Virus record (IMG/VR): IMGVR_UViG_3300042261_002385
Location: 372,266-436,265 of that record
Direction: 5' to 3' (one strand)
Length of the DNA: 64,000 nt
Part shown: in pieces, positions 5,480 to 55,995 of the stretch
Layout of the letters: each line of letters opens with the position of its first letter
Position numbering within the stretch: position 1 is the first letter of the stretch
The notes under the pieces: model-generated
What the model saw: only the letters and a program-made list of their open reading frames with translations
The model's database searches: none
Told to the model about the DNA's origin: nothing
Position numbers and translations under genes: made by a program

Positions 5480-5596
5480 AAATTCTTTTAATCTTGTTTT
5501 TTCTTATAAACCTTCTAAAGTATCTGCTAGCAGCACCTCTTTTAGGATTTAACTTCTGATACATTTTTTCTACAGCCTTTTCTACCCAACTTTCAC

Positions 5597-6202
5597 TCAT
5601 TTCTCACACACCTTTCTAAAATCAGATAATATACTATTTCTTAATTCTCTAAACTCTAAGTCTAATTCATTCCAAGTCCAATCTTTAGACACTAATTTAT
5701 CCCAGATATAGTTAGCCATCTCAAAGTCATAAATGGATCCAGTAGTTGCAACCTGAGTTGCAAAAATTGGAATTCTAAGTGAATGAAAAATAGATTTTAT
5801 TCCAGTGTGATAGTCTCCTATTTCTAATTTCTTTTTGCACTTCACCCAGCTATTTGAACTTACATGAGAAGTCGCGTGTCTAAGTTTAGGAAAATCTATA
5901 TCTAAATTGTATGGGATATTTTCTTGAATCTTAGCCCAGGTTGGGGCAAAAATACACTCTAAGTTATTTATTCTATGCCACTCTAAATCTTCCTTAAACT
6001 TATCTGGAGTATAGATATGAATGTTATACTTCTCTAATTTCAACTCAATTGCTTCTACTGAATTGTTTGCTACCATTATGATATCCCAATCAGAATTTCC
6101 TGTATGAGTATTGTAAATTCTACTTCCGAAGATATAGATGTTATGCACCCGCTTTGGATGAAGTCCTGAATGAAGTATTATATCTTGTGCAGTTGGTATC
6201 AT
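5597..6202 (-). CDS. Nucleotidyltransferase (DNA pol beta superfamily)
   Basis: IYIFGSRIY...NSDWDII (hGS...DxD). Confidence 0.8.
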   Translation of the reverse strand: MIPTAQDIILHSGLHPKRVHNIYIFGSRIYNTHTGNSDWDIIMVANNSVEAIELKLEKYNIHIYTPDKFKEDLEWHRINNLECIFAPTWAKIQENIPYNLDIDFPKLRHATSHVSSNSWVKCKKKLEIGDYHTGIKSIFHSLRIPIFATQVATTGSIYDFEMANYIWDKLVSKDWTWNELDLEFRELRNSILSDFRKVCEK

Positions 6203-6209
6203 AATTTAT

Positions 6210-6217
6210 CAAATATA
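6210..6217 (-). promoter_or_regulatory. Bacteroidota -7 promoter element TATATTTG
   Basis: caaatata on + strand, just upstream of the 6202 operon. Confidence 0.6.
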
Positions 6218-6260
6218 ATAATTTAATTTAATATATACTACAATAAAAAAAGATAAGATT

Positions 6261-6662
6261 ATGAAACACTTAAAATTATTTGAAGATTATAAATATAAGG
6301 GCAACATCCGAGTTAAATTACTCGGAAACAATGATTTGTGGTATGCTAGTAATAATGAATTTGAAATATCAAATATTAAATATACCATTCTCAGTCATAA
6401 TAGTAGCAAACAAGTAATTTATGTTGCTACACTCAATAATGCTGATGATTGTCAAGAAATTCAAATCTCTACGTTGAAGTATCACTACTTTGAGGGTGAT
6501 TTAGTGATGTATTCTGAAGTAGGTTCTCATTTATGGGACAAAGAAATAGAATTATTCAAAAATTTGGGCGGTCAGTTTGGTTATTTAAACTTTTGTAAAT
6601 TAGATAGTGGAACTGAAGTTGGTAAAACAGACCATAGGAAATGGTTTGAAATAGTAGGTTAG
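6261..6662 (+). CDS. Hypothetical N-tagged protein
   Basis: MKHLKLFED; C-terminus EVGKTDHRKWFE resembles that of 8305. Confidence 0.75.
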   Translation: MKHLKLFEDYKYKGNIRVKLLGNNDLWYASNNEFEISNIKYTILSHNSSKQVIYVATLNNADDCQEIQISTLKYHYFEGDLVMYSEVGSHLWDKEIELFKNLGGQFGYLNFCKLDSGTEVGKTDHRKWFEIVG

Positions 6663-6712
6663 ATGTAGAACTGAAGTTAGTAAAACAGAGCATAGGAAAT
6701 GGTTTGAAATAG
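6610..6712 (+). repeat. Two 45-bp direct repeats (2 mismatches, 58-bp period)
   Basis: gaactgaagtt[g/a]gtaaaacaga[c/g]cataggaaatggtttgaaatag at 6610-6654 and 6668-6712. Confidence 0.9.
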
Positions 6713-6739
6713 ATATAATAAGAAAAAAAGATTAGTATC

Positions 6740-6982
6740 ATGAAACACTTAAATAAATTTAATGAAGGTTGGTTTTCTAAAGATGAAGAAAATGAACCAG
6801 TAGATGCGGTAAATAGTAAAATTGAAGATGCTGCTTATAGTTTAGGATCATTTGGTACTATGACTAAGCAAGCCGCTTTTATAAACGGTGCTAAATGGGC
6901 TATTCATAATTTAACAGATGACGAGATTAAATTACTCAGAGAGAATACTGATAAAGACGACCATAGTTTCTTTGGTTTATAA
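6740..6982 (+). CDS. Hypothetical N-tagged protein
   Basis: MKHLNKFNEG. Confidence 0.7.
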   Translation: MKHLNKFNEGWFSKDEENEPVDAVNSKIEDAAYSLGSFGTMTKQAAFINGAKWAIHNLTDDEIKLLRENTDKDDHSFFGL

Positions 6983-7017
6983 TAATTTAATTTAATATAA
7001 TAGAGAAAAATAGGATT

Positions 7018-7623
7018 ATGAAATACTTAAAATTATTTGAAGAATTCAAGATTGATTCAGAGCGAAGTTATAACATCGGGGATACTATTAGTGGTGTTCC
7101 AGGTAGCGATACATCTATAGTTGTTCGAATTGATGAAAGGGGAAAACCTATATCTGTTATGGCGAGATTGGATGTTCATCCTCTCTTTACTCAAAGAGAT
7201 ATAAAAGAACTTTATGATCTTTCTGATGCAAAGAGCATTGGTGAAATATTAAGGCTACCGGAAAATAAATTCTCAGGAAATTCCGGGTGGAGAATTCCTC
7301 TTTTGAGTGAGGTAGATATCATGAGAAAGATGTATAAAGGTCAAATAAGTCAAAATTGGAACTTTACACGACTTGAAGAGCCTCTTTATCTATATTCTAA
7401 TCATGAGTGTAGAGAATTTTGGGAAATGGATCCAAATACTCGACTAACATATCAACTAAAAAATAAAGATAAACTAGGACTTTTAGATTTTGCAGGAGGT
7501 GGATTAGATAAATTAGGAACCATCACAAAGCAGTTTAATATTAGACTTGTATATGACCTTTATAATTATAAATATTCAGATACTCTGAAAGATTTTGTTA
7601 AAACACCAAGATTTGATAGTTAA
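7018..7623 (+). CDS. N-tagged protein with DUF1566/Lcl-like WRxP motif
   Basis: MKYLKLFEEF; SGWRIPLLSEV. Confidence 0.5.
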   Translation: MKYLKLFEEFKIDSERSYNIGDTISGVPGSDTSIVVRIDERGKPISVMARLDVHPLFTQRDIKELYDLSDAKSIGEILRLPENKFSGNSGWRIPLLSEVDIMRKMYKGQISQNWNFTRLEEPLYLYSNHECREFWEMDPNTRLTYQLKNKDKLGLLDFAGGGLDKLGTITKQFNIRLVYDLYNYKYSDTLKDFVKTPRFDS

Positions 7624-7690
7624 AAAAAAGACATTTTTAAATTTTATTATTAAATTATAATATAGAGAAAAAATAGAGAAAAATAGGATT

Positions 7691-8282
7691 ATGAAATATA
7701 TTAAATTATTTGAAGAATGGAGTCCTAATTTAGAGTATGATGAATCCCAGAAAGAGGAGTTGAAAATAAATTACGAAAAATACGTAATGTCCAGAGATTA
7801 TATTCCTAATATGATTAGAGATTTAATTAAGAAACATTTGTCTGAAAAATGGCATCCAACTCCCACACTAGATATTGTGGAAGTTAAGTGGGAACCAGAA
7901 CCTTTCAAAGATCTTGCGAAACAAAAGGGTATTGTCAGGAAAAAAGAATTTAATGATGTTACTTATGCAGGAAAACTTACTCTAAAATCTGATTTTGCAA
8001 ATACCCCAATTAGTTATAGCACAGGTGGTAACCCAATTTGTTGGTGGTGATTATAGAGCGATGTTAGGAGAGAGATTTGATTTAATCTTAGCCGAAGCGA
8101 CTAAATTACTTGATAATGTGTTGGATTTACCATATAAAGGCGAAATGGATGATAGTAGCCATGGACCAATTTCTTTCAGACAAGTTGATAATACCTATAC
8201 ACTCAAACAAGAATTTGACAGACCACATGAATATAAGGCAATTTTCGGTTTAATACTTGATAAGGTTTATTTAGAAATATAA
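7691..8282 (+). CDS. N-tagged protein, apparently split by a 1-nt frameshift near 8036 (ORFs 7691-8050 and 7995-8282)
   Basis: MKYIKLFEEW; removing one base in ccaattt gives a continuous ...GGNPFVGGDYRAMLGERF... reading. Confidence 0.5.
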
Positions 8283-8304
8283 AAAATAAAAAAAAGATAA
8301 GATT

Positions 8305-8856
8305 ATGAAACACTTAAAATTATTTGAAGACTTCAATGAGTATGATTTTGACGGTGCTAAAAACAATCCTGATAGAATTGTGGTCAAATTTGCGCCAGGT
8401 GGGTATAATAAATTTTGGGATCAATATGTAAAATCAACCGGTGATTATTATAGAGGATTAGGTGAGAATTGGACTTACTTTGGTAGTTGGGAAGACTTAG
8501 AAGAAAAATTTTCTAGTAAGGGATTAAAAATGAGAGATGGTGAATATTATCTTTTATATAAGAACTATGATCCAAAGGATATTAAAGATTGGTACTCTAA
8601 GGGGAAACCTGAAGGTAAATTAGCAGCGACATTCTATTTTCTAAAATATAGCAAAGAAGCTGGAGAAATATACATAGTCTCTGTATATGGAACTGAATAT
8701 CAATATGTAGAAGCGAACAAAGAATATACAACTGATAAACTTGAAGGATATCCACAATCTACTTATTGTCGTTTTGATAAAGGTGATGTAGCTAGATTGG
8801 TTGAGGTAGGTTCTATCGATCATAGAGGTTATTTTGAGGTCGCATCAGTATCATAA
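8305..8856 (+). CDS. Hypothetical N-tagged protein
   Basis: MKHLKLFEDF. Confidence 0.75.
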   Translation: MKHLKLFEDFNEYDFDGAKNNPDRIVVKFAPGGYNKFWDQYVKSTGDYYRGLGENWTYFGSWEDLEEKFSSKGLKMRDGEYYLLYKNYDPKDIKDWYSKGKPEGKLAATFYFLKYSKEAGEIYIVSVYGTEYQYVEANKEYTTDKLEGYPQSTYCRFDKGDVARLVEVGSIDHRGYFEVASVS

Positions 8857-8871
8857 ATAAGATTAAAACTA

Positions 8872-9123
8872 TTATAATAACTGACTTAATTTTAACTCTC
8901 TAATTATAGGAGTTAGTAAAATTCTTTGGTCATCCGGGAGTCCAATTAAACAACTTTGTAGTAAAACCGTAAAGTGTGAAACCTGGACTTCATCTTCATA
9001 GATATAAGCATTTGATAATTCTCTTTCAATTTCTCTTAAGTTTGAGGCAAGTTCATACATCTGCTTGTCAATTGCAGTATGTTTAATGTCTTTAATAGCT
9101 GATATAACTAAACCTGCTTTCAT
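8872..9123 (-). CDS. Hypothetical protein with C-terminal tag (RELKLSQLL)
   Basis: ORF; tag. Confidence 0.7.
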   Translation of the reverse strand: MKAGLVISAIKDIKHTAIDKQMYELASNLREIERELSNAYIYEDEVQVSHFTVLLQSCLIGLPDDQRILLTPIIRELKLSQLL

Positions 9124-9155
9124 AAAATAATATATAAAAAAAATTAATATATGTT

Positions 9156-10133
9156 ATGGCAAATGATCCAAAAACAATTATAGAAGAATGGGGAGTTGAT
9201 CCACTTGAAGGAGTTCAATTAAATGAAGTTCAACAAACAATAGTTGATGAGGCATTAGGAAATGCCACTTCATTCAGAAATGATAAAGTGGTAAGTGATG
9301 AACTTGAAAATAAATATTCTAGTTTATTCAGTCAATGTGATAGTGTAATTAAATCATTGGATGAAACATCTCTTAAAAGACTTCTTAGAAATGTTTATAT
9401 AAATGAAAATCCAAAGTGGCACCCTGAGAGAAACTCACTTGTTCATATTAAAATCGTTATGTCACGAGGAATTCAAACTGGAGATGATGACCTTATTCAA
9501 GCAGCACTTTATCACGACATTTCTAAATTTGATACTGTTTCATTTAACAAACAGGGATGGCCAACATCACTTGGGCATGACAAAGCAGGAGCTGATGTTG
9601 CTATGTCAGATGGTGCAAATGAAGTAGTTGTTTATGTTTGTGCTAAACATATGGTCATTAAGGGTTGGCAGGGAGCTTCAGAAGGTGGTGAATTAAATCC
9701 ATCAACTAAGTTTAAGATATTTGCAGATGCTCCAGGAGCAGACAATAATGAAAAAGCAAAATCATTTTGGAAACTTTGTGTGTTTTCTAAAATGGATAAT
9801 ATGGGAAATGATTTCAACTATGAAAACTTAAGATGGGATAATCCAAACTATGATAATTGGGATGAAGAGTGTCCTTTAAGAGATCAATTTAAGAAAGCAG
9901 AACTAGTTGAGATTAAAGTGGAAAAACCAAAACCTCCTTTCTCTGCTCAAGAGATTATGGCATTTGGAGTTCAACCAGGTCCAATGATGGGTAAAGTTAT
10001 TGGAGCTACTACTGGAAAAACTAGAGAAGAGGCTTTAGAAATTATTAAACAAATGACTGGTAATCCGAATTTGACTATGGAATCTAAAAGATGGATTAGG
10101 ACATTTGAGAGTTTTAGAAATAAATTAAGATAG
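9156..10133 (+). CDS. HD-domain phosphohydrolase with CCA-adding-enzyme-like C-terminal segment
   Basis: WHPE..SLVH, AALYHDISK, GH; GVQPGPMMGKVI; ends KRWIRTFESFR. Confidence 0.7.
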   Translation: MANDPKTIIEEWGVDPLEGVQLNEVQQTIVDEALGNATSFRNDKVVSDELENKYSSLFSQCDSVIKSLDETSLKRLLRNVYINENPKWHPERNSLVHIKIVMSRGIQTGDDDLIQAALYHDISKFDTVSFNKQGWPTSLGHDKAGADVAMSDGANEVVVYVCAKHMVIKGWQGASEGGELNPSTKFKIFADAPGADNNEKAKSFWKLCVFSKMDNMGNDFNYENLRWDNPNYDNWDEECPLRDQFKKAELVEIKVEKPKPPFSAQEIMAFGVQPGPMMGKVIGATTGKTREEALEIIKQMTGNPNLTMESKRWIRTFESFRNKLR

Positions 10134-13544: not shown

Positions 13545-14270
13545 ATGAAAAGTGAAACAGAATTTAAGAAATTTGCACTAAGTGAGGGTTTATCATCAAT
13601 GGACCTACACTATCACCAACAACAAATTGAGGCTTCTATGACACCTTATATTCTTGAAGAAAGAGAAATGAGGGTCACACAAATGGATGTATTCAGTAGA
13701 TTACTAAGAGATAGAATTATTTGGATATCAGGAGTTGTAGATCAAAGAATGTGTGATGTCACTCAAGCACAGCTTATGTTTTTAGATTCAACAGAAAAGA
13801 AAGATATCACACTTCATATAAATTCACCAGGTGGTTCCGTTTTACATGGTTTAGGAATTATTGATGTTATGAACTATATCAACTCAGATATCCAAACAAT
13901 CAATACAGGAATGGCAGCATCTATGGGTTCTGTTCTACTTTCATCTGGAACAAAAGGAAAACGATCATCACTTCTACATTCAAGAGTTATGACACACCAA
14001 GTCAGTCACGGAATGCAAGGAAATATTCAAGATACAACTATTTCTCACATTGAAGGACACAAATACAACTATATCTTATTTAAGATTTTGGCTGACAACT
14101 GTGGAAAATCTTTTGAAGAAATGATTGAGTCTTCTCGTCGTGACAAATGGTTTAACTCACATGAAGCACTCCAGTTTGGATTGATTGATGAGGTTATCGG
14201 TGATAACTCTATGGATAAAATGTTAGTTGGATTTGATGACTATTATAACAGAGAAGTTTTATCAAAATAA
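13545..14270 (+). CDS. clpP: ATP-dependent Clp protease proteolytic subunit (Bacteroidota-type)
   Basis: PYILEER..DVFSRLL.DRII, INSPGGSV, GMAASMG (Ser), MTHQ (His), RDKW (Asp). Confidence 0.95.
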   Translation: MKSETEFKKFALSEGLSSMDLHYHQQQIEASMTPYILEEREMRVTQMDVFSRLLRDRIIWISGVVDQRMCDVTQAQLMFLDSTEKKDITLHINSPGGSVLHGLGIIDVMNYINSDIQTINTGMAASMGSVLLSSGTKGKRSSLLHSRVMTHQVSHGMQGNIQDTTISHIEGHKYNYILFKILADNCGKSFEEMIESSRRDKWFNSHEALQFGLIDEVIGDNSMDKMLVGFDDYYNREVLSK

Positions 14271-14666: not shown

Positions 14667-16472
14667 ATGTCAAATTGGACTTTAATTAAAAGAATCTGGG
14701 AATTCGCTTACCCTTTTAGAAAAACTATTGGAGTAATTTTCTTATGTATTCTTTTTACAGCCATCATTGATGGAATCAATACTTATTTTTTAAGTAATAT
14801 TTTTGATATCATTCAGAAACACTCAAACGATCCAAATTATATGAATGCAGCTCTTCTATCAGCTGCATTGGCTGGAATAGGAGTATTTGTAAGAATTCTT
14901 ATTTCAAGATATCAAGGTAATCTTGAAATAAGAAAACTTGATATAACTGCCTCAAACCATTTAAATCATTTTTCAATTGCAAAATATTTTGGATTTTCTA
15001 ATGGTCAACACATCAATGAACACTCCGGAGTTAAACAAAATATAATTACATCTGGTTTTCAATCAGTTCAAGGTCAAATTCAGCTTTTTGTTTATCACTT
15101 ACTTCCAGCAGTTGCTAACTTTATAGTTTCAATTGTGATGTTGTTTTATATTAGCTCCTACATAGGATTCGCTTACTTAGGTGTGTCTTTTATTTTTCTT
15201 TGGTCGATATATAAGTTCAATACTTATCTTCAACCAAAATTGAGAGAAGTAAGAGACGCTAGAAATCAAACAGCTAGAACAATTTCTGAATTGTATCGAT
15301 TTGTATTTTTAATTAAAAATGAAGTAGCTGAAAAGAAATCCTTAAATGATTTGGATGATGTTCAAGATGCGCATCAACAGGCCTATGAAAAGACTTGGCT
15401 ACCTGGAAATAATTGGTTGACCATCATTCGATTATCAACTGCTGGATTTAGATACTTAACCATACTTTTTGCAGTTTGGTTGTTATTTAATGGTTTTATA
15501 ACTGCAGGTGCTATCTTCTTAATCTTTACCTGGTCTCAAAACTTCATAACGTCTCTTTGGATGATAACTGATATGCAAAAACAATTTATAACAGATAAAA
15601 TTAACATTGAAAAGTATTTTGAAATTTTAGAAATCAAGCCTGACGTTCAAGAAGTTGAGACTCCAATAAGTTCAGATTTAATAGGAGATATTGAGTTTAG
15701 AAATGTCGAGTTCAGTTATCCACAAAGAAAAAAATCACATAGTGATAAATTAGAAGATGAACTTCAATCAGAAATGGTTTTGAAAGGACTAACATTTACA
15801 ATTAAAGAAGGTGAAAAAGTTGCCTTTGTCGGTGAAAGTGGTTCGGGTAAATCTACAATTGCGAATCTTGTAAGAAGAGCATTCGATCCACAAAATGGTG
15901 AAATTTTAGTAAATGGTAATAATCTTAAAGAATTAGAACTAAAATCATTTCTTAGAAAAATTGGAAGCGTAGACCAAGAGGTAAATCTCTTTGATAAGAG
16001 TATTCGAGAAAACATTTCTTATGGAACAGAAAGACTACTAACCGATGAGGAGTTAAATAACATATCAAAGATGGCTCGTATTGATTCATTTTACAAAAAA
16101 CTAGAACATGGTTGGGACACTATTGTTGGTGAACGTGGAGCTAAAGTATCAGGCGGTGAAAAACAAAGAATTGGTATCGCAAGAGCATTGGCTAAGAATC
16201 CAGAAATACTTATCTTTGATGAGGCGACTTCTGCACTTGACACTGTAAGTGAAAGAGTGGTTCAAAAATCAATCGATGCTGTTAGTAAAGGAAAAACTTC
16301 TATAATCATCGCACACCGTCTTTCAACTGTAAAAAACTGCGACAAGATATTTGTATTAAAACAGGGAGTATTATTAGCTGAAGGAACACATGAGCAACTT
16401 TTAGAAAGTTGCGAATATTATAAAGAATTAGTAAAACATCAATTAACAAATAAACCAACAGAAAATGTATAA
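14667..16472 (+). CDS. ABC exporter, fused TMD + ATPase
   Basis: TM helices; GESGSGKS, VSGGEKQR, ILIFDEATS, IAHRL. Confidence 0.93.
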   Translation: MSNWTLIKRIWEFAYPFRKTIGVIFLCILFTAIIDGINTYFLSNIFDIIQKHSNDPNYMNAALLSAALAGIGVFVRILISRYQGNLEIRKLDITASNHLNHFSIAKYFGFSNGQHINEHSGVKQNIITSGFQSVQGQIQLFVYHLLPAVANFIVSIVMLFYISSYIGFAYLGVSFIFLWSIYKFNTYLQPKLREVRDARNQTARTISELYRFVFLIKNEVAEKKSLNDLDDVQDAHQQAYEKTWLPGNNWLTIIRLSTAGFRYLTILFAVWLLFNGFITAGAIFLIFTWSQNFITSLWMITDMQKQFITDKINIEKYFEILEIKPDVQEVETPISSDLIGDIEFRNVEFSYPQRKKSHSDKLEDELQSEMVLKGLTFTIKEGEKVAFVGESGSGKSTIANLVRRAFDPQNGEILVNGNNLKELELKSFLRKIGSVDQEVNLFDKSIRENISYGTERLLTDEELNNISKMARIDSFYKKLEHGWDTIVGERGAKVSGGEKQRIGIARALAKNPEILIFDEATSALDTVSERVVQKSIDAVSKGKTSIIIAHRLSTVKNCDKIFVLKQGVLLAEGTHEQLLESCEYYKELVKHQLTNKPTENV

Positions 16473-53544: not shown

Positions 53545-55995
53545 TTATCTTAATAATCTCACGCTACCCTGAAGTTCTCTTTTATCATCGTTTTTTGGAA
53601 GACCAAACTCGATAGTCCAGTTATAGATTCCATCAGGACAGATTTTATTATTATAAGTTCCATCCCATTTACCAGTAACATCAAAAGATTCCCATACCAT
53701 TTCTCCCCATCTATTATACATAGTCATATGAAACTGATAGATATCAACTCCTGAAGTAATAATTGGAGAAAAGTATTGATTGTGTTCGTCTCCGTCTGGA
53801 GTAAATGAATTTGGAATATAAATTAATTCTTGTGGACAAAGTTGAATAGTAACTGTTATATTTTGTGGATAAGATTGGCAGCCTAATTCCCAGCGAGTTG
53901 CTTGAAATAAAAACACACCTTCTTGATTCCAAGTTAAGTTAATTTGGTCTCCGATTAAGGTATCTCCAAAAGTTGACCATTCTGTATAACCTGGTTGTGA
54001 AAAAAGTGATACATAGGTATCAGTAATTGAGTCTCCTTCACATAGTTCGTGATACTCAGAATTAGTGATTTGACCATCAATTTGTATTGAGAATTGTGGA
54101 CGTGGATTTACTTCAATTTGAGATGTTTGTGTAAATTGACACCCTGATTGAATATAAGTATACGTTATGGTGTTTAGACCTGCTAATTGTGTTGTTGGAC
54201 AGAACTGAGAATTTTGAACACCAACTCCTGAGAATTGACCACCTACTGGTTGTGCAGATAATTGGACACAGTTATCATAGTCACAAAGTGGAAGAACTGG
54301 TGTGATTTGTGGAACGATATCTAAATCTACAATAGTAAATGTTTGTGGAGGTGAAAGACATCCAGTTACATCTTCTCCTATAACAGTTAAGGCATTTGGG
54401 TAAACACCACCAGCGACTCCTGTCACATCGAGTAAGATGTTTTGGGTTCCTTGACCAGAGATTGTTCCGATTGTTGAGGTCCAGTTATAGGTTAAGTTAT
54501 TAAAAAGACTTGATGTTTGATAAGGGTTATTTGAAGAGTTAACACAAACTGTATCACTTCCTATTATTGGGTTTATTATAACTTGTGGTGGATCTGTTAA
54601 GGTAACGGTTCCAGTTGCTTGGCATCCATTAGCATCGGTTACTACAACACTAAAGTTTCCTTGGCAAAGACCAGTTGCAGTTTGTCCAGTTTGATTATCA
54701 GACCAAAGATAAGTGTAGGGTGCAATACCTGCTACTGGATTTACCACGGCTTGTCCATCACAGTAACTGTAGCAAAGTGGATTAGTTCCTGTAACTGGTG
54801 GTTGTGGAAGTGCTGCTGGTTCAACAATAGTGGCCAATCCTTGATAGCTACAACCAGATGCGTCCTGGAGTGTGAAGTTATAGTTTCCAGCACAAAGACC
54901 ATTTTGTGTTAGTGAGTTTCCGACTAAACCAGGCCAACTTATAGTTATTGGAGCAGTTCCACCTATTGGAGTTACAATTATCTGACAAGTGCAATCACCA
55001 TTACAAAGTGGATTCGTTATTTGAACTCCTGGAGGTGGTAGATTCGGGGTTGGAGTCACTAAAATAGTGTCTGGTCCTAAGTTTCCAGCTCCAGCATTAC
55101 ATTGAGACCAGCCTAGATTACAAGTTGGATAAACAAATTGACAAGTGTATTGAGTTGGTCCATTTGGAGTTACCGTGATTTGAGGTCCGGTTCCGATTGG
55201 AATTGGATTTCCAACTTGAAACCAAGTTAATGTAGGTGTCACTTGTGGACCTGATGGTGTCCATCTGTAAGCGTTGTTCTGAGTTGTCCACTGAGTTGAG
55301 TTTCTACCTGGAACAGTCACGGCTGCGGATCCTAAAAGGTTATGAACACCTTGAACTGCGGTTCCGCCAGCCCATTGTGGACAGTTTGGTTTATTTTGAA
55401 TATGATTTTCGATTACGTTTGTAGATTCGTAAATTACAATATGGAAAGTTCCTAATAGGTTAGTGCAAGAAAACATAGGAACGTTTATCCAACTAACAAT
55501 TAATCTACGACATGGAGCTACGCCTTGAACTTGATAACGGACTAAACCTCCGATACCTGGATTCCAGTCTTGCCACGGTCCCATAATACAATTCTTAGGT
55601 GTTAAGGCGTTTCCTGTTGGAATTGGATTTGATGTAAAAGTTGTTGGTTGACCAGCGCTAAATGAAATCCAACCGTTTGAACCTATCCAGAATTGTGTAT
55701 ACGTGTTTCCATAGTAACAGAAAGTAAAACCAATGTTAAATGGTCCAGATTGAGAGTCATCTCCTAAAGCAACAGTAGTTCCGGCATTGGGTTGACCGAC
55801 AAATGGTATGTTAGTAACGGTATAGTTTGTGGTTTGATTTGGATTAGAACCAGGTCCACACTGAGAAAGGTCAGCTGTTAAAGTAGTTTGTGTTACTCCA
55901 CAAGGTAGAGTTACATCTGGTCCTAAATAAGGACAATATTGACCAAATGTGAATTGGGCAAAGATAAGGCTTAAAAAAATTATTAGGTTTCTCAT
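53545..55995 (-). CDS. T9SS cargo adhesin-like protein: SprB-like repeats + gliding-motility-associated (type B) C-terminal domain
   Basis: Signal peptide ...FGQ; P.C...C.G....P..G.APYTY.WSD repeats; YIPNSFTPDGD...NRWGE...WDGTY...DGIY.W. Confidence 0.88.
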   Translation of the reverse strand: MRNLIIFLSLIFAQFTFGQYCPYLGPDVTLPCGVTQTTLTADLSQCGPGSNPNQTTNYTVTNIPFVGQPNAGTTVALGDDSQSGPFNIGFTFCYYGNTYTQFWIGSNGWISFSAGQPTTFTSNPIPTGNALTPKNCIMGPWQDWNPGIGGLVRYQVQGVAPCRRLIVSWINVPMFSCTNLLGTFHIVIYESTNVIENHIQNKPNCPQWAGGTAVQGVHNLLGSAAVTVPGRNSTQWTTQNNAYRWTPSGPQVTPTLTWFQVGNPIPIGTGPQITVTPNGPTQYTCQFVYPTCNLGWSQCNAGAGNLGPDTILVTPTPNLPPPGVQITNPLCNGDCTCQIIVTPIGGTAPITISWPGLVGNSLTQNGLCAGNYNFTLQDASGCSYQGLATIVEPAALPQPPVTGTNPLCYSYCDGQAVVNPVAGIAPYTYLWSDNQTGQTATGLCQGNFSVVVTDANGCQATGTVTLTDPPQVIINPIIGSDTVCVNSSNNPYQTSSLFNNLTYNWTSTIGTISGQGTQNILLDVTGVAGGVYPNALTVIGEDVTGCLSPPQTFTIVDLDIVPQITPVLPLCDYDNCVQLSAQPVGGQFSGVGVQNSQFCPTTQLAGLNTITYTYIQSGCQFTQTSQIEVNPRPQFSIQIDGQITNSEYHELCEGDSITDTYVSLFSQPGYTEWSTFGDTLIGDQINLTWNQEGVFLFQATRWELGCQSYPQNITVTIQLCPQELIYIPNSFTPDGDEHNQYFSPIITSGVDIYQFHMTMYNRWGEMVWESFDVTGKWDGTYNNKICPDGIYNWTIEFGLPKNDDKRELQGSVRLLR

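What the first reader, a model, noticed from the sequence alone, without database searches (positions are those of the whole stretch)
6244..8330. Near-identical DNA cassettes (leader + tag codons) head different genes
Seen: ataaaaaaagataagattatgaaacacttaaaattatttgaaga precedes and starts both 6261 and 8305; tagagaaaaataggattatgaaata..taaa.tatttgaagaa starts both 7018 and 7691. The genes diverge right after the tag, although 6261 and 8305 share a C-terminal EVG..DHR..FE motif. Inference: the leader+tag acts as a mobile module recombined onto new cargo genes, which would explain how the tag spreads.
Basis: partly seen in the sequence, partly recalled or inferred. Interest (0 to 1): 0.62.

Follow-up and report, generated by a model that had tools for sequence, protein, structure and literature searches.

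The report
Address-tag gene cassettes in huge phage
A 436-kb freshwater phage begins about one gene in ten with the same ten-residue peptide tag, and in this five-gene array the tag and its short leader are also the DNA seams at which whole genes are inserted, lost or given a new head, much as in the internal-protein genes of phage T4.

Summary
Genes 6261 and 8305 share 42 exact bases, covering the 5' leader and the first 8 codons. Genes 7018 and 7691 share 27 exact bases. No such match appears in shuffles. The window is the end of a 436-kb huge phage with a T4-type head, probably infecting Bacteroidota.

The tag, M-[KR]-[HYW]-[LIV]-[KR]-x-[FY]-[EK]-x-F, heads 54 of about 525 genes, almost all unrelated ORFans. 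It occurs only at N-termini and its synonymous codon use matches the genome's, so it is selected as a peptide. Genome-wide the leaders are unrelated; leader-plus-tag DNA identity is confined to neighbouring genes.

Natural relatives show the array is hyperplastic. One has only gene 6740 between the same flanking genes. Metagenome contigs show deletions whose ends lie in the repeated promoter, the tag, or a 9-base repeat. Orthologues of 6261 lie elsewhere and carry a different leader. In other phage lineages, orthologues of 6740 and 8305 carry a different 22-residue tag that heads whole arrays there.

Best reading: an exchangeable N-terminal address label, most likely a T4-like capsid-targeting, protease-cleaved signal (inferred, about 0.35), whose codons and leader also serve as recombination seams (about 0.8).

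The parts
6213..6238 (+). Promoter-like AT-rich element that ends in the genome-wide motif TAATATA[TA]A. It is native to the NTase/6740 intergenic region.
   Evidence: The motif has 140 copies in the genome, and 104 of them lie within 60 nt upstream of an ORF start. The element is conserved in relative L039 up to base 6238. A 20-base copy is at 6984-7003.
6239..6260 (+). Leader type 1, the likely 5'UTR of gene 6261, containing AAAGATAAGATT.
   Evidence: Identical to 8289-8304. The same leader type precedes the 6740 homologue in L042. Orthologues of 6261 (L048, L050, L051) have a different leader.
6261..6662 (+). Gene 6261 (133 aa). Tag MKHLKLFEDY at 6261-6290; the cargo is an ORFan with a C-terminal domain shared with 8305.
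   Evidence: ORF list. No Pfam or PHROG match. 15 orthologue clusters at 70-89% identity, found in other neighbourhoods. hhalign to the 8305 family.
6607..6712 (+). 48-nt direct repeat (6607-6654 and 6665-6712): a duplicated 3' end of gene 6261.
   Evidence: the repeat finder family D3, 94% identity. The duplicate is also present next to the orthologue in L050 but not in L048.
6713..6739 (+). Leader type 1', a diverged copy that precedes gene 6740.
   Evidence: Alignments A1 and A6. It is absent from L039, where the promoter lies 4 nt from the ATG.
6740..6982 (+). Gene 6740 (80 aa). Tag MKHLNKFNE, a short linker, and a conserved three-helix cargo. This is the resident gene of the locus.
   Evidence: 72 homologue clusters. 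In alignment A3 the cargo is conserved and the N-terminus varies. It is the only array gene present in L039. AF2 model: residues 1-17 unstructured, H19-37, H43-56, H60-69.
6977..6985 (+). TTATAATAA, left copy of the 9-base direct repeat that flanks the 1.9-kb block 7018..8305. The right copy is at 8872-8880.
   Evidence: L039 has a single copy. Joints 6975>8871 (run X11) and 6976>8872 (run X6, 9 letters fit both sides).
6984..7017 (+). Copy of the local promoter (6984-7003) followed by leader type 2 (6999-7017), upstream of gene 7018.
   Evidence: Alignment A1. 27-nt exact match to 7672-7698.
7018..7623 (+). Gene 7018 (201 aa). Tag MKYLKLFEEF; the cargo is an ORFan.
   Evidence: No relative found in IMG/VR by the search for related loci. 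Shares only the tag with 7691.
7652..7690 (+). AT-rich promoter-like stretch and leader type 2 with a tandem 11-nt duplication, upstream of gene 7691.
   Evidence: A contig variant skips 7629-7686.
7691..8282 (+). Gene 7691 (119 aa, tag MKYIKLFEEW), followed by an overlapping +1 ORF 7995/8061-8282. This may be one frameshifted gene.
   Evidence: ORF list. Sequence at 8030-8065. Not resolved.
8287..8304 (+). Leader type 1 copy upstream of gene 8305.
8305..8856 (+). Gene 8305 (183 aa). Tag MKHLKLFEDF; the cargo is an ORFan.
   Evidence: 10 homologue clusters. Some orthologues carry other heads, including the 22-residue RLTESDL-type tag. A contig variant lacks 8275-9139.

Best explanation
The region is a hyperplastic array of five small, separately promoted genes of unknown function in a 436-kb huge phage with a T4-type head. 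The phage comes from fresh water and its host is probably a member of Bacteroidota.

Each gene unit consists of an AT-rich promoter-like motif, a leader of about 20 nt, an N-terminal tag of about 10 residues, and a cargo.

The tag is a peptide-level address label:
- it heads about 10% of the genome's genes;
- it sits only at N-termini;
- it is predicted to be a free, unstructured extension;
- it is replaced by another lineage's tag on orthologous cargo.

The function I think most likely is the one known for the capsid targeting sequence of phage T4 internal proteins. The tag would dock the protein to the prohead core and be cut off after a conserved Glu by the T4-type prohead protease. The tagged ORFans would then be a large, fast-changing set of virion-packaged, injected proteins. 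This step is inferred; my probability is about 0.35.

Because every unit starts with nearly the same promoter end, A-rich leader and tag codons, these short stretches act as crossover points. Units are inserted, deleted and re-headed there, and neighbouring heads become near-identical. This step is shown by comparison with natural variants; my probability is about 0.8.
For: Tag census and peptide-level selection
- 54 of 525 genes carry the tag, with information also at positions not used to select them (E8, F10). The internal frequency is about 1e-4, so 0.07 or fewer are expected at N-termini.
- After the tag is removed, only five tagged pairs show any BLASTP similarity.
- Only 5 of 53 tagged proteins hit Pfam.
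- Synonymous codon use in the tag equals genome usage, for example F7 TTT:TTC 26:8 against 75:25.
- The leader+tag RNA has no structure; z-scores run from -0.8 to +0.5.
- AF2 of gene 6740's protein: residues 1-17 have pLDDT below 50, and the cargo is a three-helix bundle.

Tag distribution in other genomes
- Tag pattern counts: G000 20, LR756502 24, LR745206 16, LR756504 15, LR756500 10. The reversed-pattern control gave 0 in every genome.
- One tag variant lies on 61 stretches from at least 55 IMG/VR contigs.
- Each genome uses one tag type. Contigs L046 and L047 have arrays headed by MK[KR]II[RK]LTE[SR]DLTRIV..VI.E (14 of 26 and 6 of 18 genes). That tag is absent from G000 and the LR genomes, yet it heads orthologues of 6740 and 8305.

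Recombination
- L039 lacks 6239-6739 and 6986-8880.
- Joints lie in the tag, in the promoter copy and in a 9-base repeat.
- The 6740 unit sits in a different neighbourhood in L042.
- Orthologues of 6261 lie elsewhere, with another leader and their own terminator.
- Leader identity among tagged genes equals the control, and the top pairs are all neighbours.

Capsid-targeting lead
- T4-type head genes: Gp23 major capsid protein 7e-29, T4-type portal 5e-59, and a weak Peptidase_S77 match fused to a scaffold placed directly before the capsid gene, as annotated in phages MA9V-2 and PTm1.
- T4 ipII and ipIII share identical leader+tag DNA, and their tags MKTYQEFIAE and MKTFKEF fit M-K-x-hydrophobic-x-x-F.
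- T4 internal proteins are diverse, with only the targeting sequence in common (PMC3012670).
- Every tag has a Glu at positions 8-13. 37 of 54 fit hydrophobic-x-E, mostly followed by S, N, E, D or G.
- The 'NE' that ends the tag is invariant across 28 members of the 6740 family although the N-terminus varies in length.
- The scaffold carries about 14 [YF][ILV]AE repeats.
Against: - There is no direct evidence that any tagged protein is in a virion or is cleaved.
- The prohead protease match is below Pfam's cut-off (20-22.5 bits against 27) and has no PDB match by sequence.
- 17 of 54 tags lack a hydrophobic residue at P3 of the first Glu.
- A few tagged proteins look like ordinary enzymes: class-I GATase, an Asp/Glu racemase-like protein, a P-loop kinase-like protein and a cyanophycin-synthase N-domain.
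- Fifty-odd packaged species is many.
- The tag is absent from the nearest cultured relatives with T4-type heads (pT24, MA9V-2, PTm1, PAU) and from Lak, T4 and the 735-kb LR756501.
- Scaffold repeats do not track tag presence.
- The phage encodes a ClpP, which fits a degradation-tag reading equally well.
- The read laying joints come from short Logan contigs at 85% likeness, some with sides under 30 bases. The tool warns that such joints can come from other organisms. Only the L039, L042, L048 and L050 comparisons rest on long contigs.
Confidence: 0.5

Rival explanations
1. The tag is a different kind of peptide signal. It could be an N-terminal degradation tag read by an unfoldase working with the phage's own ClpP, giving timed removal of takeover proteins. 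It could also be a label for a chaperone or for some other compartment. Under this reading the recombination seams remain as described.
For: - The tag shows peptide-level selection, occurs only at N-termini and is unstructured.
- The phage encodes a ClpP (window 13545-14270, Pfam 4e-54).
- Some tagged proteins are enzyme-like.
- All tag types begin Met-basic-hydrophobic. From my own memory this resembles ClpX N-terminal recognition motifs; I did not test it.
Against: - No unfoldase partner was identified.
- A degradation tag does not explain the resemblance to the T4 capsid targeting sequence, the Glu-ending of all tag types, or the parallel with the T4 ipII/ipIII cassettes.
- About 37% of tagged genes carry the same promoter-like motif as the portal, scaffold and tail-fibre genes, against 18% of other genes.
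Confidence: 0.25
2. Plain tandem gene duplication followed by fast divergence of the cargo. Under this reading the leader and tag look alike only because purifying selection froze them, and no cassette-level recombination occurred.
For: - Some neighbours are true paralogues: 205491/206614 in G000; pairs at 59% and 25-36% identity in the arrays of LR756500 and LR756502.
- 6261 and 8305 share a C-terminal domain.
Against: - Non-coding leaders are not constrained genome-wide (0.38 against 0.37), yet here they are 100% identical beside cargos with 0-28% identity.
- The heads are mosaic. 6261 shares its promoter with 7018 but its leader and tag with 8305.
- Orthologues of 6261 at 83-89% identity sit in other neighbourhoods with another leader.
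- L039 lacks four of the five genes, and the breakpoints are at repeats.
Confidence: 0.1
3. The conserved head is an RNA or translation element, for example an optimised initiation region for a host without Shine-Dalgarno use, or the binding site of a translational repressor. The peptide would be a by-product.
For: - The leaders are A-rich and the second codon is AAA.
- The cassette spans roughly from the predicted transcript start to codon 8.
- The region is unstructured.
- From my own knowledge, Bacteroidota rely on A-rich leaders for initiation.
Against: - Synonymous sites vary freely, in genome proportions.
- Replacements are conservative at the protein level: K/R, F/Y, L/I/V and H/Y/W.
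- Relatives use many different codons for the same peptide.
- The alternative tag is 22 residues long and conserved as a peptide.
- Leaders differ among tagged genes.
Confidence: 0.07
4. Chance resemblance in a 31% G+C genome.
For: A/T-rich, lysine-rich N-termini are common: 155 of 525 genes start with MK.
Against: - Shuffles gave 0 matches.
- 0.07 or fewer tags are expected at N-termini, against 54 seen.
- The reversed-pattern control gave 0 in every genome.
Confidence: 0.01

Closest known systems
Phage T4 internal-protein genes (ipI, ipII, ipIII) and their capsid targeting sequence
   Same: - Unrelated, fast-evolving small proteins share only an N-terminal peptide of about 10 residues with the pattern M-K-x-aromatic/hydrophobic-x-x-F, ending in Glu.
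- In T4, ipII and ipIII share identical leader plus tag DNA: 16 bases upstream and 32 coding bases. Here 6261 and 8305 do the same.
- The phage has T4-type capsid, portal and core genes.
- In T4 the tag docks proteins to the scaffolding core and is cut off by the prohead protease (PMC3012670; the cleavage rule L/I-x-E is from my own knowledge).
   Different: - Three genes in T4 against at least 54 here, about 10% of the genome, some of them enzyme-like.
- The tag sequence differs.
- Packaging and cleavage are untested here.
- Distinct tag types in different phage lineages on orthologous cargo have not, to my knowledge, been described for T4-type phages.
PeSL (promoter-early stem-loop) mobile regulatory cassettes of T4-type phages (PMC2839356, PMC4122927)
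   Same: - Short conserved regulatory sequences are repeated through hyperplastic regions rich in ORFans.
- Insertions, deletions and replacements between close relatives end in these repeats.
   Different: - The repeat here is a promoter-like AT motif plus 5'UTR plus the first 8-9 codons, so it reaches into the protein.
- There is no sigma-70 two-hexamer excess and no stem-loop terminator inside the array.
- Mini-circles were not tested.
N-terminal packaging signals of other phages (P1 DarB, PMC9024508) and cleaved propeptides of ejection proteins in giant phages such as SPN3US (PMC5694885, PMC10052503)
   Same: An N-terminal segment directs large or diverse proteins into the head for delivery into the host. 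Giant phages package dozens of protein species.
   Different: Those signals are longer, are not a shared decapeptide across tens of genes, and are not known to mark recombination seams.

Membership tests
T4-type capsid targeting sequence / internal-protein genes | A short N-terminal peptide conserved among otherwise unrelated proteins of one phage | tested here: met
   54 of 525 genes carry it. After removing the tag, only five tagged pairs show any similarity.
T4-type capsid targeting sequence / internal-protein genes | The phage builds a T4-type prohead (gp23 capsid protein, gp20 portal, gp21 protease, scaffolding core) | tested here: inconclusive
   Gp23 at 7e-29 and Portal_T4 at 5e-59 are above their cut-offs. 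Peptidase_S77 scores only 20-22.5 bits against a cut-off of 27. It is fused to a repeat-rich scaffold in the syntenic position, which is annotated as protease/scaffold in MA9V-2 and PTm1. No PDB match by sequence.
T4-type capsid targeting sequence / internal-protein genes | Sequence likeness to MKTYQEFIAE / MKTFKEF | tested here: inconclusive
   Both fit M-K-x-hydrophobic-x-x-F followed by Glu. The peptides are too short for a statistical test of homology. The exact tag pattern has 0 hits in T4.
T4-type capsid targeting sequence / internal-protein genes | The tag ends at a prohead-protease site (L/I-x-E) and is removed | tested here: inconclusive
   All 54 tags have a Glu at positions 8-13, and 37 of 54 have L, F, I, Y or V two residues before it. 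Cleavage itself is not testable with these tools.
T4-type capsid targeting sequence / internal-protein genes | Tagged proteins are present in the virion, and the tag suffices to package a foreign protein | not testable with these tools
   The phage is uncultured and no proteome exists. The complex prediction of a tagged protein with the protease-scaffold gave no verdict.
T4-type capsid targeting sequence / internal-protein genes | Near-identical leader+tag DNA on neighbouring, otherwise different genes | tested here: met
   T4 ipII/ipIII, compared with 6261/8305 and 7018/7691 here.
PeSL mobile regulatory cassettes | Conserved short cassette repeated in hyperplastic, ORFan-rich regions | tested here: met
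   The promoter-like motif has 140 copies, 104 of them upstream of ORF starts. The leader+tag is repeated within the array.
PeSL mobile regulatory cassettes | Strong sigma-70-like early promoter | tested here: not met
   21 consensus sites found against 23.6 expected. The motif here is TAATATA[TA]A, with no upstream hexamer detected. The promoter's timing is unknown.
PeSL mobile regulatory cassettes | A stem-loop terminator is part of the cassette | tested here: not met
   0 terminator-like sites in 5500-9500. A G+C-rich stem-loop followed by a T-run does follow the 6261 orthologues in their own context (L048, L050).
PeSL mobile regulatory cassettes | Indels and replacements between close relatives end in the cassettes | tested here: met
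   L039 compared with G000, contig joints, and the 6261 unit's boundaries at 6226 and about 6725.
PeSL mobile regulatory cassettes | Excised mini-circles | not tested
   One backward joint (9087>6212, run X11) was seen but not resolved.

The most novel reading that the evidence does not exclude
A clade of huge freshwater phages runs a greatly enlarged version of T4's capsid-targeting system. Interchangeable, lineage-specific N-terminal address tags would send a tenth of the proteome, mostly fast-evolving ORFans, into the capsid for injection. At least three tag types were seen: MKHLKxFE-type, the 22-residue RLTESDL-type and MKIIITEDQY-type. The tag codons would double as the recombination seams through which phages trade these injected effectors.
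Probability: 0.3. Interest if true: 0.85.

Novelty: new variant of a known kind. Interest (0 to 1): 0.68.

Why it matters
Most genes of huge phages have no known function and no handle for study. A shared, exchangeable N-terminal label sorts about 10% of them into one functional class. If the capsid-targeting reading holds, it predicts which proteins are delivered into the host at the first moment of infection. These would be candidate counter-defence and takeover effectors.

The result also shows at base resolution how such genes are gained, lost and re-headed in natural lake populations. This extends to the translated start of the gene a mechanism so far described for T4-type regulatory cassettes.

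If the tags do target proteins to capsids, they would also be portable tools for loading proteins into capsids. I found no paper in the searchable library that mentions either tag.

Tried and rejected
- Complex prediction of a tagged 88-aa head-module protein with the 698-aa protease-scaffold: score 0.00, no verdict. It counts neither for nor against binding.
- PDB sequence search with the protease domain: no match.
- Pfam and PHROGs on the array genes: nothing.
- The search for related loci in IMG/VR with 8305, 7018 and the flanking HD-domain gene: no relatives, although 225 stretches matched patterns that include the tag.
- Exact 44-mer in JGI metagenome contigs: 0.
- Literature searches for the tag strings: the type-1 hits were unrelated (an author's name), and the type-2 strings returned nothing.
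- Sigma-70 promoter and terminator scan of the array: no excess and no terminators.
- RNA folding of the four cassettes: no structure beyond shuffles.
- Scaffold [YF][ILV]AE repeats as the tag's docking partner: they are present in LR756501, which has no tags, and nearly absent in LR756500, which has them. No correlation.
- Isoelectric point of the cargo: 72% acidic against 57% for other genes. Not diagnostic.
- First T4 region fetched (128-133 kb) did not hold the ip genes.
- One family scan exceeded the residue limit and was resent with fewer proteins.
- The large representative-protein search was not used.
Full report
**1. What the window is**

The window is the last 64 kb of a single 436,265-bp contig with 31% G+C. 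IMG/VR holds it as a virus record that is about 95% complete.

The genome has a T4-type head module:
- a Gp23-family major capsid protein (Pfam 7e-29);
- a T4-type portal (5e-59);
- directly upstream of the capsid gene, a 698-aa protein whose first 140 residues weakly match the T4 prohead protease family S77 (20-22.5 bits, below the 27-bit cut-off). The rest of that protein is a scaffold-like region with about 14 tandem 13-residue repeats containing [YF][ILV]AE.

By capsid protein, the nearest relatives are the uncultured huge phages:
- LR756502 and LR745206 (70% identity);
- LR756504 and LR756501 (about 50%);
- LR756500 (34%);
- Lak phages (29%);
- cultured jumbo phages of Flavobacteriia and Sphingomonas (25%).

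A window gene carries a type IX secretion C-terminal domain and SprB repeats, which points to a Bacteroidota host. The array sequence occurs in freshwater and lake metagenomes from 12 studies.

**2.

- Bases 6245-6286 and 8289-8330 are identical over 42 nt: 16 bases of leader, the ATG and 23 further coding bases.
- Bases 6999-7025 equal 7672-7698 over 27 nt.
- No shuffle gives such a match.
- Gene 6740 has a weaker copy of the same head.
- Beyond the tag the proteins differ.
- Genes 6261 and 8305 do share a real C-terminal domain of about 70 residues (hhalign probability 88.8%, E 2.5e-6, 28% identity).

The heads are mosaic. Gene 6261 shares a 20-base promoter-like stretch with 7018 but its leader and tag with 8305. 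Gene 7018 shares its leader and tag with 7691.

**3. The tag is a genome-wide, N-terminal, peptide-level feature**

I reduced the ORFs of 50 aa or more to 525 non-overlapping genes covering 94% of the genome. Of these, 54 begin with M-[KR]-x-[LIVFWM]-x-x-[FY].

Positions that I did not use for the selection are also informative: H/Y/W at position 3, E or K at 8, and F at 10. The same profile is met about once in 10,000 internal positions, so at most 0.07 N-terminal hits are expected by chance.

With the first 14 residues removed, only five tagged pairs keep any BLASTP similarity. Only 5 of 53 tagged proteins hit Pfam.

Synonymous codons at the conserved residues follow the genome's usage:

| Position | Codons in tags | Genome usage |
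|---|---|---|
| K2 | AAA:AAG 31:11 | 83:17 |
| F7 | TTT:TTC 26:8 | 75:25 |
| E8 | GAA:GAG 24:7 | 78:22 |

Replacements are conservative at the protein level. The transcript start region has no RNA structure. In an AlphaFold model of the 6740 protein built on 28 homologues, residues 1-17 are unstructured and the cargo is a three-helix bundle. The model's mean pLDDT is 62, so this is only indicative.

**4. The leader is not part of a genome-wide cassette**

| Region compared among the 54 tagged genes | Mean identity | Control (random genes) |
|---|---|---|
| Upstream 30 nt | 0.383 | 0.371 |
| First 30 coding nt | 0.617 | not computed |
| Next 30 coding nt | 0.321 | 0.298 |

All the top leader+tag pairs are physical neighbours: the true paralogues 205491/206614, the window array, and 8581/9126.

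What many genes do share is a promoter-like motif, TAATATA[TA]A. It has 140 copies, and 104 of them lie within 60 nt of an ORF start, at spacings of either 4-8 nt or 17-25 nt. It precedes the portal, the protease-scaffold, a tail-fibre gene and many others. It precedes 20 of the 54 tagged genes and is therefore not tag-specific. In the array, the conserved leader corresponds roughly to the whole 5'UTR downstream of that motif.

**5. The tag in other genomes**

A strict DNA pattern for the tag gave these counts:

| Genome | Hits |
|---|---|
| G000 | 20 |
| LR756502 | 24 |
| LR745206 | 16 |
| LR756504 | 15 |
| LR756500 | 10 |
| LR756501, T4, pT24, MA9V-2 | 0 |

The reversed-pattern control gave 0 in every genome. 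A slightly looser pattern gave 0 hits in MA9V-2, PTm1, Lak-B5 and PAU. It gave one hit in pT24 that runs into a stop codon.

Relatives hold long arrays with their own variants. LR756502 uses MKHLKxYNES and MKHLKxYKIFES in about 24 of 34 consecutive genes. LR756500 uses MKYIKEYEEF. Some neighbours there are paralogues and most are not.

One variant alone (MKHLKx[FY]NE[ST]) lies on 61 stretches from at least 55 IMG/VR contigs of 9.5-676 kb. In those stretches 154 of 797 ORFs are tagged.

**6. Tags are exchangeable between lineages**

The 6740 family has 72 clusters. Its cargo is conserved, while its N-terminus varies in length and sequence but stays tag-like. The Asn-Glu that ends the tag is invariant.

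Two members of the 6740 family, and one orthologue of 8305, instead start with a 22-residue tag, MK[KR]IIRLTESDLTRIV.RVIKE. On the contigs that encode them (L046, L047), 14 of 26 and 6 of 18 genes start with that tag. A third type, MKIIITEDQY.., occurs there too.

That second tag is absent from G000 and four LR genomes and from the 61 IMG/VR stretches. Type-1 tags are absent from L046 and L047. So each genome uses one tag type, and orthologous cargo wears the tag of the genome it lives in. This is what one expects of an address label read by a lineage-specific partner. The first ten residues of types 1 and 2 fit one pattern, M-K-x-hydrophobic-x-x-hydrophobic-x-E-S.

**7. The array is hyperplastic and its seams are the repeated heads**

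L039 is a 77-kb contig from a close relative with 79-93% nucleotide identity in flanking genes. There the nucleotidyltransferase gene is followed by the promoter motif, 4 nt, the 6740 homologue, and then directly the 83-aa reverse gene.

Relative to L039, G000 has two insertions:
- 6239-6739, holding leader 1, gene 6261, the 48-nt duplicate and leader 1';
- a 1,895-bp block holding 7018, 7691/8061 and 8305. This block begins with a copy of the local promoter and is flanked by the 9-base direct repeat TTATAATAA at 6977-6985 and 8872-8880.

The HD-domain gene 9156-10133 is a further insertion.

Logan contigs from four other metagenomes show:
- a tag-to-tag joint, 6275>6755;
- a promoter-to-promoter joint, 6237>7006;
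- the 9-base-repeat joint, 6975/6976>8871/8872, in two runs. One of these is a minor variant beside contigs identical to G000;
- loss of 8305 plus the reverse gene, 8274>9140;
- loose ends where unrelated contigs match only the cassette.

The tool warns that joints at 85% likeness or with short sides can come from other organisms. I therefore give these less weight than the long-contig comparisons.

In L042, the 6740 unit (promoter, a type-1 leader, tag and cargo, 93% aa identity) sits among entirely different genes.

Orthologues of 6261 at 83-89% identity (L048, L050, L051) lie between unrelated genes, next to an NAPRTase gene. They have a different A-rich leader and are followed by their own stem-loop terminator. 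Homology with G000 runs only from the promoter motif (about 6226) to about 6725. G000's 6261 therefore carries the leader of its new locus, not that of its orthologues.

**8. Mechanism**

Shown by the evidence:
- The tag is selected as a peptide.
- The near-identity of leader plus tag is local and recent.
- Gene units are gained, lost and re-headed at the promoter end, the leader, the tag codons or short A/T repeats.

Inferred: what the tag does. The closest precedent is T4.
- In the T4 record, ipII and ipIII share 16 upstream and 32 coding bases exactly.
- Their tags are MKTYQEFIAE; ipI has MKTFKEF.
- T4 internal proteins are described as a diverse set of anti-defence proteins with only the capsid targeting sequence in common. 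That sequence places them in the scaffolding core (PMC3012670).

Here the head genes are of the T4 type. Every tag has a Glu at positions 8-13, and 37 of 54 fit hydrophobic-x-Glu. The scaffold is full of [ILV]-A-E sites. Tagged small genes lie inside the head module. Tagged genes carry the promoter-like motif of the structural genes about twice as often as other genes do.

I therefore favour a capsid-targeting, protease-removed signal, at about 0.35. The main rival is another peptide signal, such as a degradation tag linked to the phage's ClpP, at about 0.25.

**9. Comparison with known systems and novelty**

The finding works like the T4 ip/CTS cassettes. [quoted passage not shown]

It is not a PeSL: there is no sigma-70-type promoter excess and no stem-loop in the array. 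Membership of the capsid-targeting class cannot be established without protein data.

What appears new:
- the scale, about 10% of genes;
- the extension of the recombination seam into the coding start;
- mutually exclusive tag types on orthologous cargo.

I rate it a new variant of a known kind.

Noticed in passing
window 6607-6654 and 6665-6712: A 48-nt direct repeat duplicates the 3' end of gene 6261 just past its stop codon. The same duplicate lies next to the orthologue in L050 but not in L048, so it is older than the insertion into this array.
   Followed up: partly
window 7691-8282: ORF 7691-8050 ends in TGG TGG TGA, and a +1 ORF (7995/8061-8282) continues. This may be one gene with a frameshift, either broken or programmed. 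Contigs from runs X3 and X6 show no difference there.
   Followed up: no
window 7662-7684: Tandem duplication of the 11-nt unit ATAGAGAAAAA in the leader of gene 7691. One contig variant in run X10 skips 7629-7686.
   Followed up: no
whole genome (G000); e.g. window 6228-6236: The promoter-like motif TAATATA[TA]A has 140 copies, and 104 of them lie within 60 nt upstream of an ORF start. The spacings fall into two classes, 4-8 nt and 17-25 nt. The short class implies leaderless or nearly leaderless transcripts.
   Followed up: partly
window 10077-10133: The HD-domain gene 9156-10133 ends with ...MESKRWIRTFESFRNKLR, a tag-like sequence at a C-terminus. It may be the stranded head of a lost tagged gene. 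The whole HD gene is absent from relative L039.
   Followed up: partly
window 13545-14270 and 14667-16472: A phage-encoded ClpP-family protease (Pfam 4e-54) lies next to an ABC-transporter-like protein with both membrane and ATPase domains.
   Followed up: partly
window 53545-55995 (- strand): An 816-aa protein with a signal peptide, an SprB repeat, a PKD-like domain and a CHU_C type IX secretion signal domain. A phage-encoded T9SS cargo points to a Bacteroidota host.
   Followed up: partly
G000 269288-271387 (L019 9288-11387, - strand): The prohead protease-scaffold fusion carries about 14 tandem 13-residue repeats (..YSEY[IL]AENLDKNI..) and an acidic, His-rich stretch. The repeats are also present in LR745206, LR756501 and LR756504.
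   Followed up: partly
L046 (JGI 3300042451) and L047 (JGI 3300071633): Arrays of genes headed by a 22-residue tag MK[KR]II[RK]LTE[SR]DLTRIV..VI.E, and by a third tag MK[IV]I[IL]TE[DS]Q... Many of these genes are preceded by a G+C-rich stem-loop and a TATTTAT-type motif.
   Followed up: partly
LR756501.1 (735 kb): This close relative (capsid protein 51% identical) has no hit to either tag pattern, although its scaffold has the [YF][ILV]AE repeats. It may use yet another tag, or none.
   Followed up: no
window 9087 > 6212 (run X11): A backward joint links the 83-aa reverse gene, through 37 other letters, to the promoter upstream of the array. The same contig then skips to 7017. This could be a different gene order in a relative or an excised circle.
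   Followed up: no
L025 5644-6165 (LR756502.1): A 173-aa tagged protein whose last 60 residues or so are the 6740 cargo (81% nucleotide identity), preceded by an extra domain of about 100 residues. The same cargo therefore occurs with and without an inserted domain behind the tag.
   Followed up: partly
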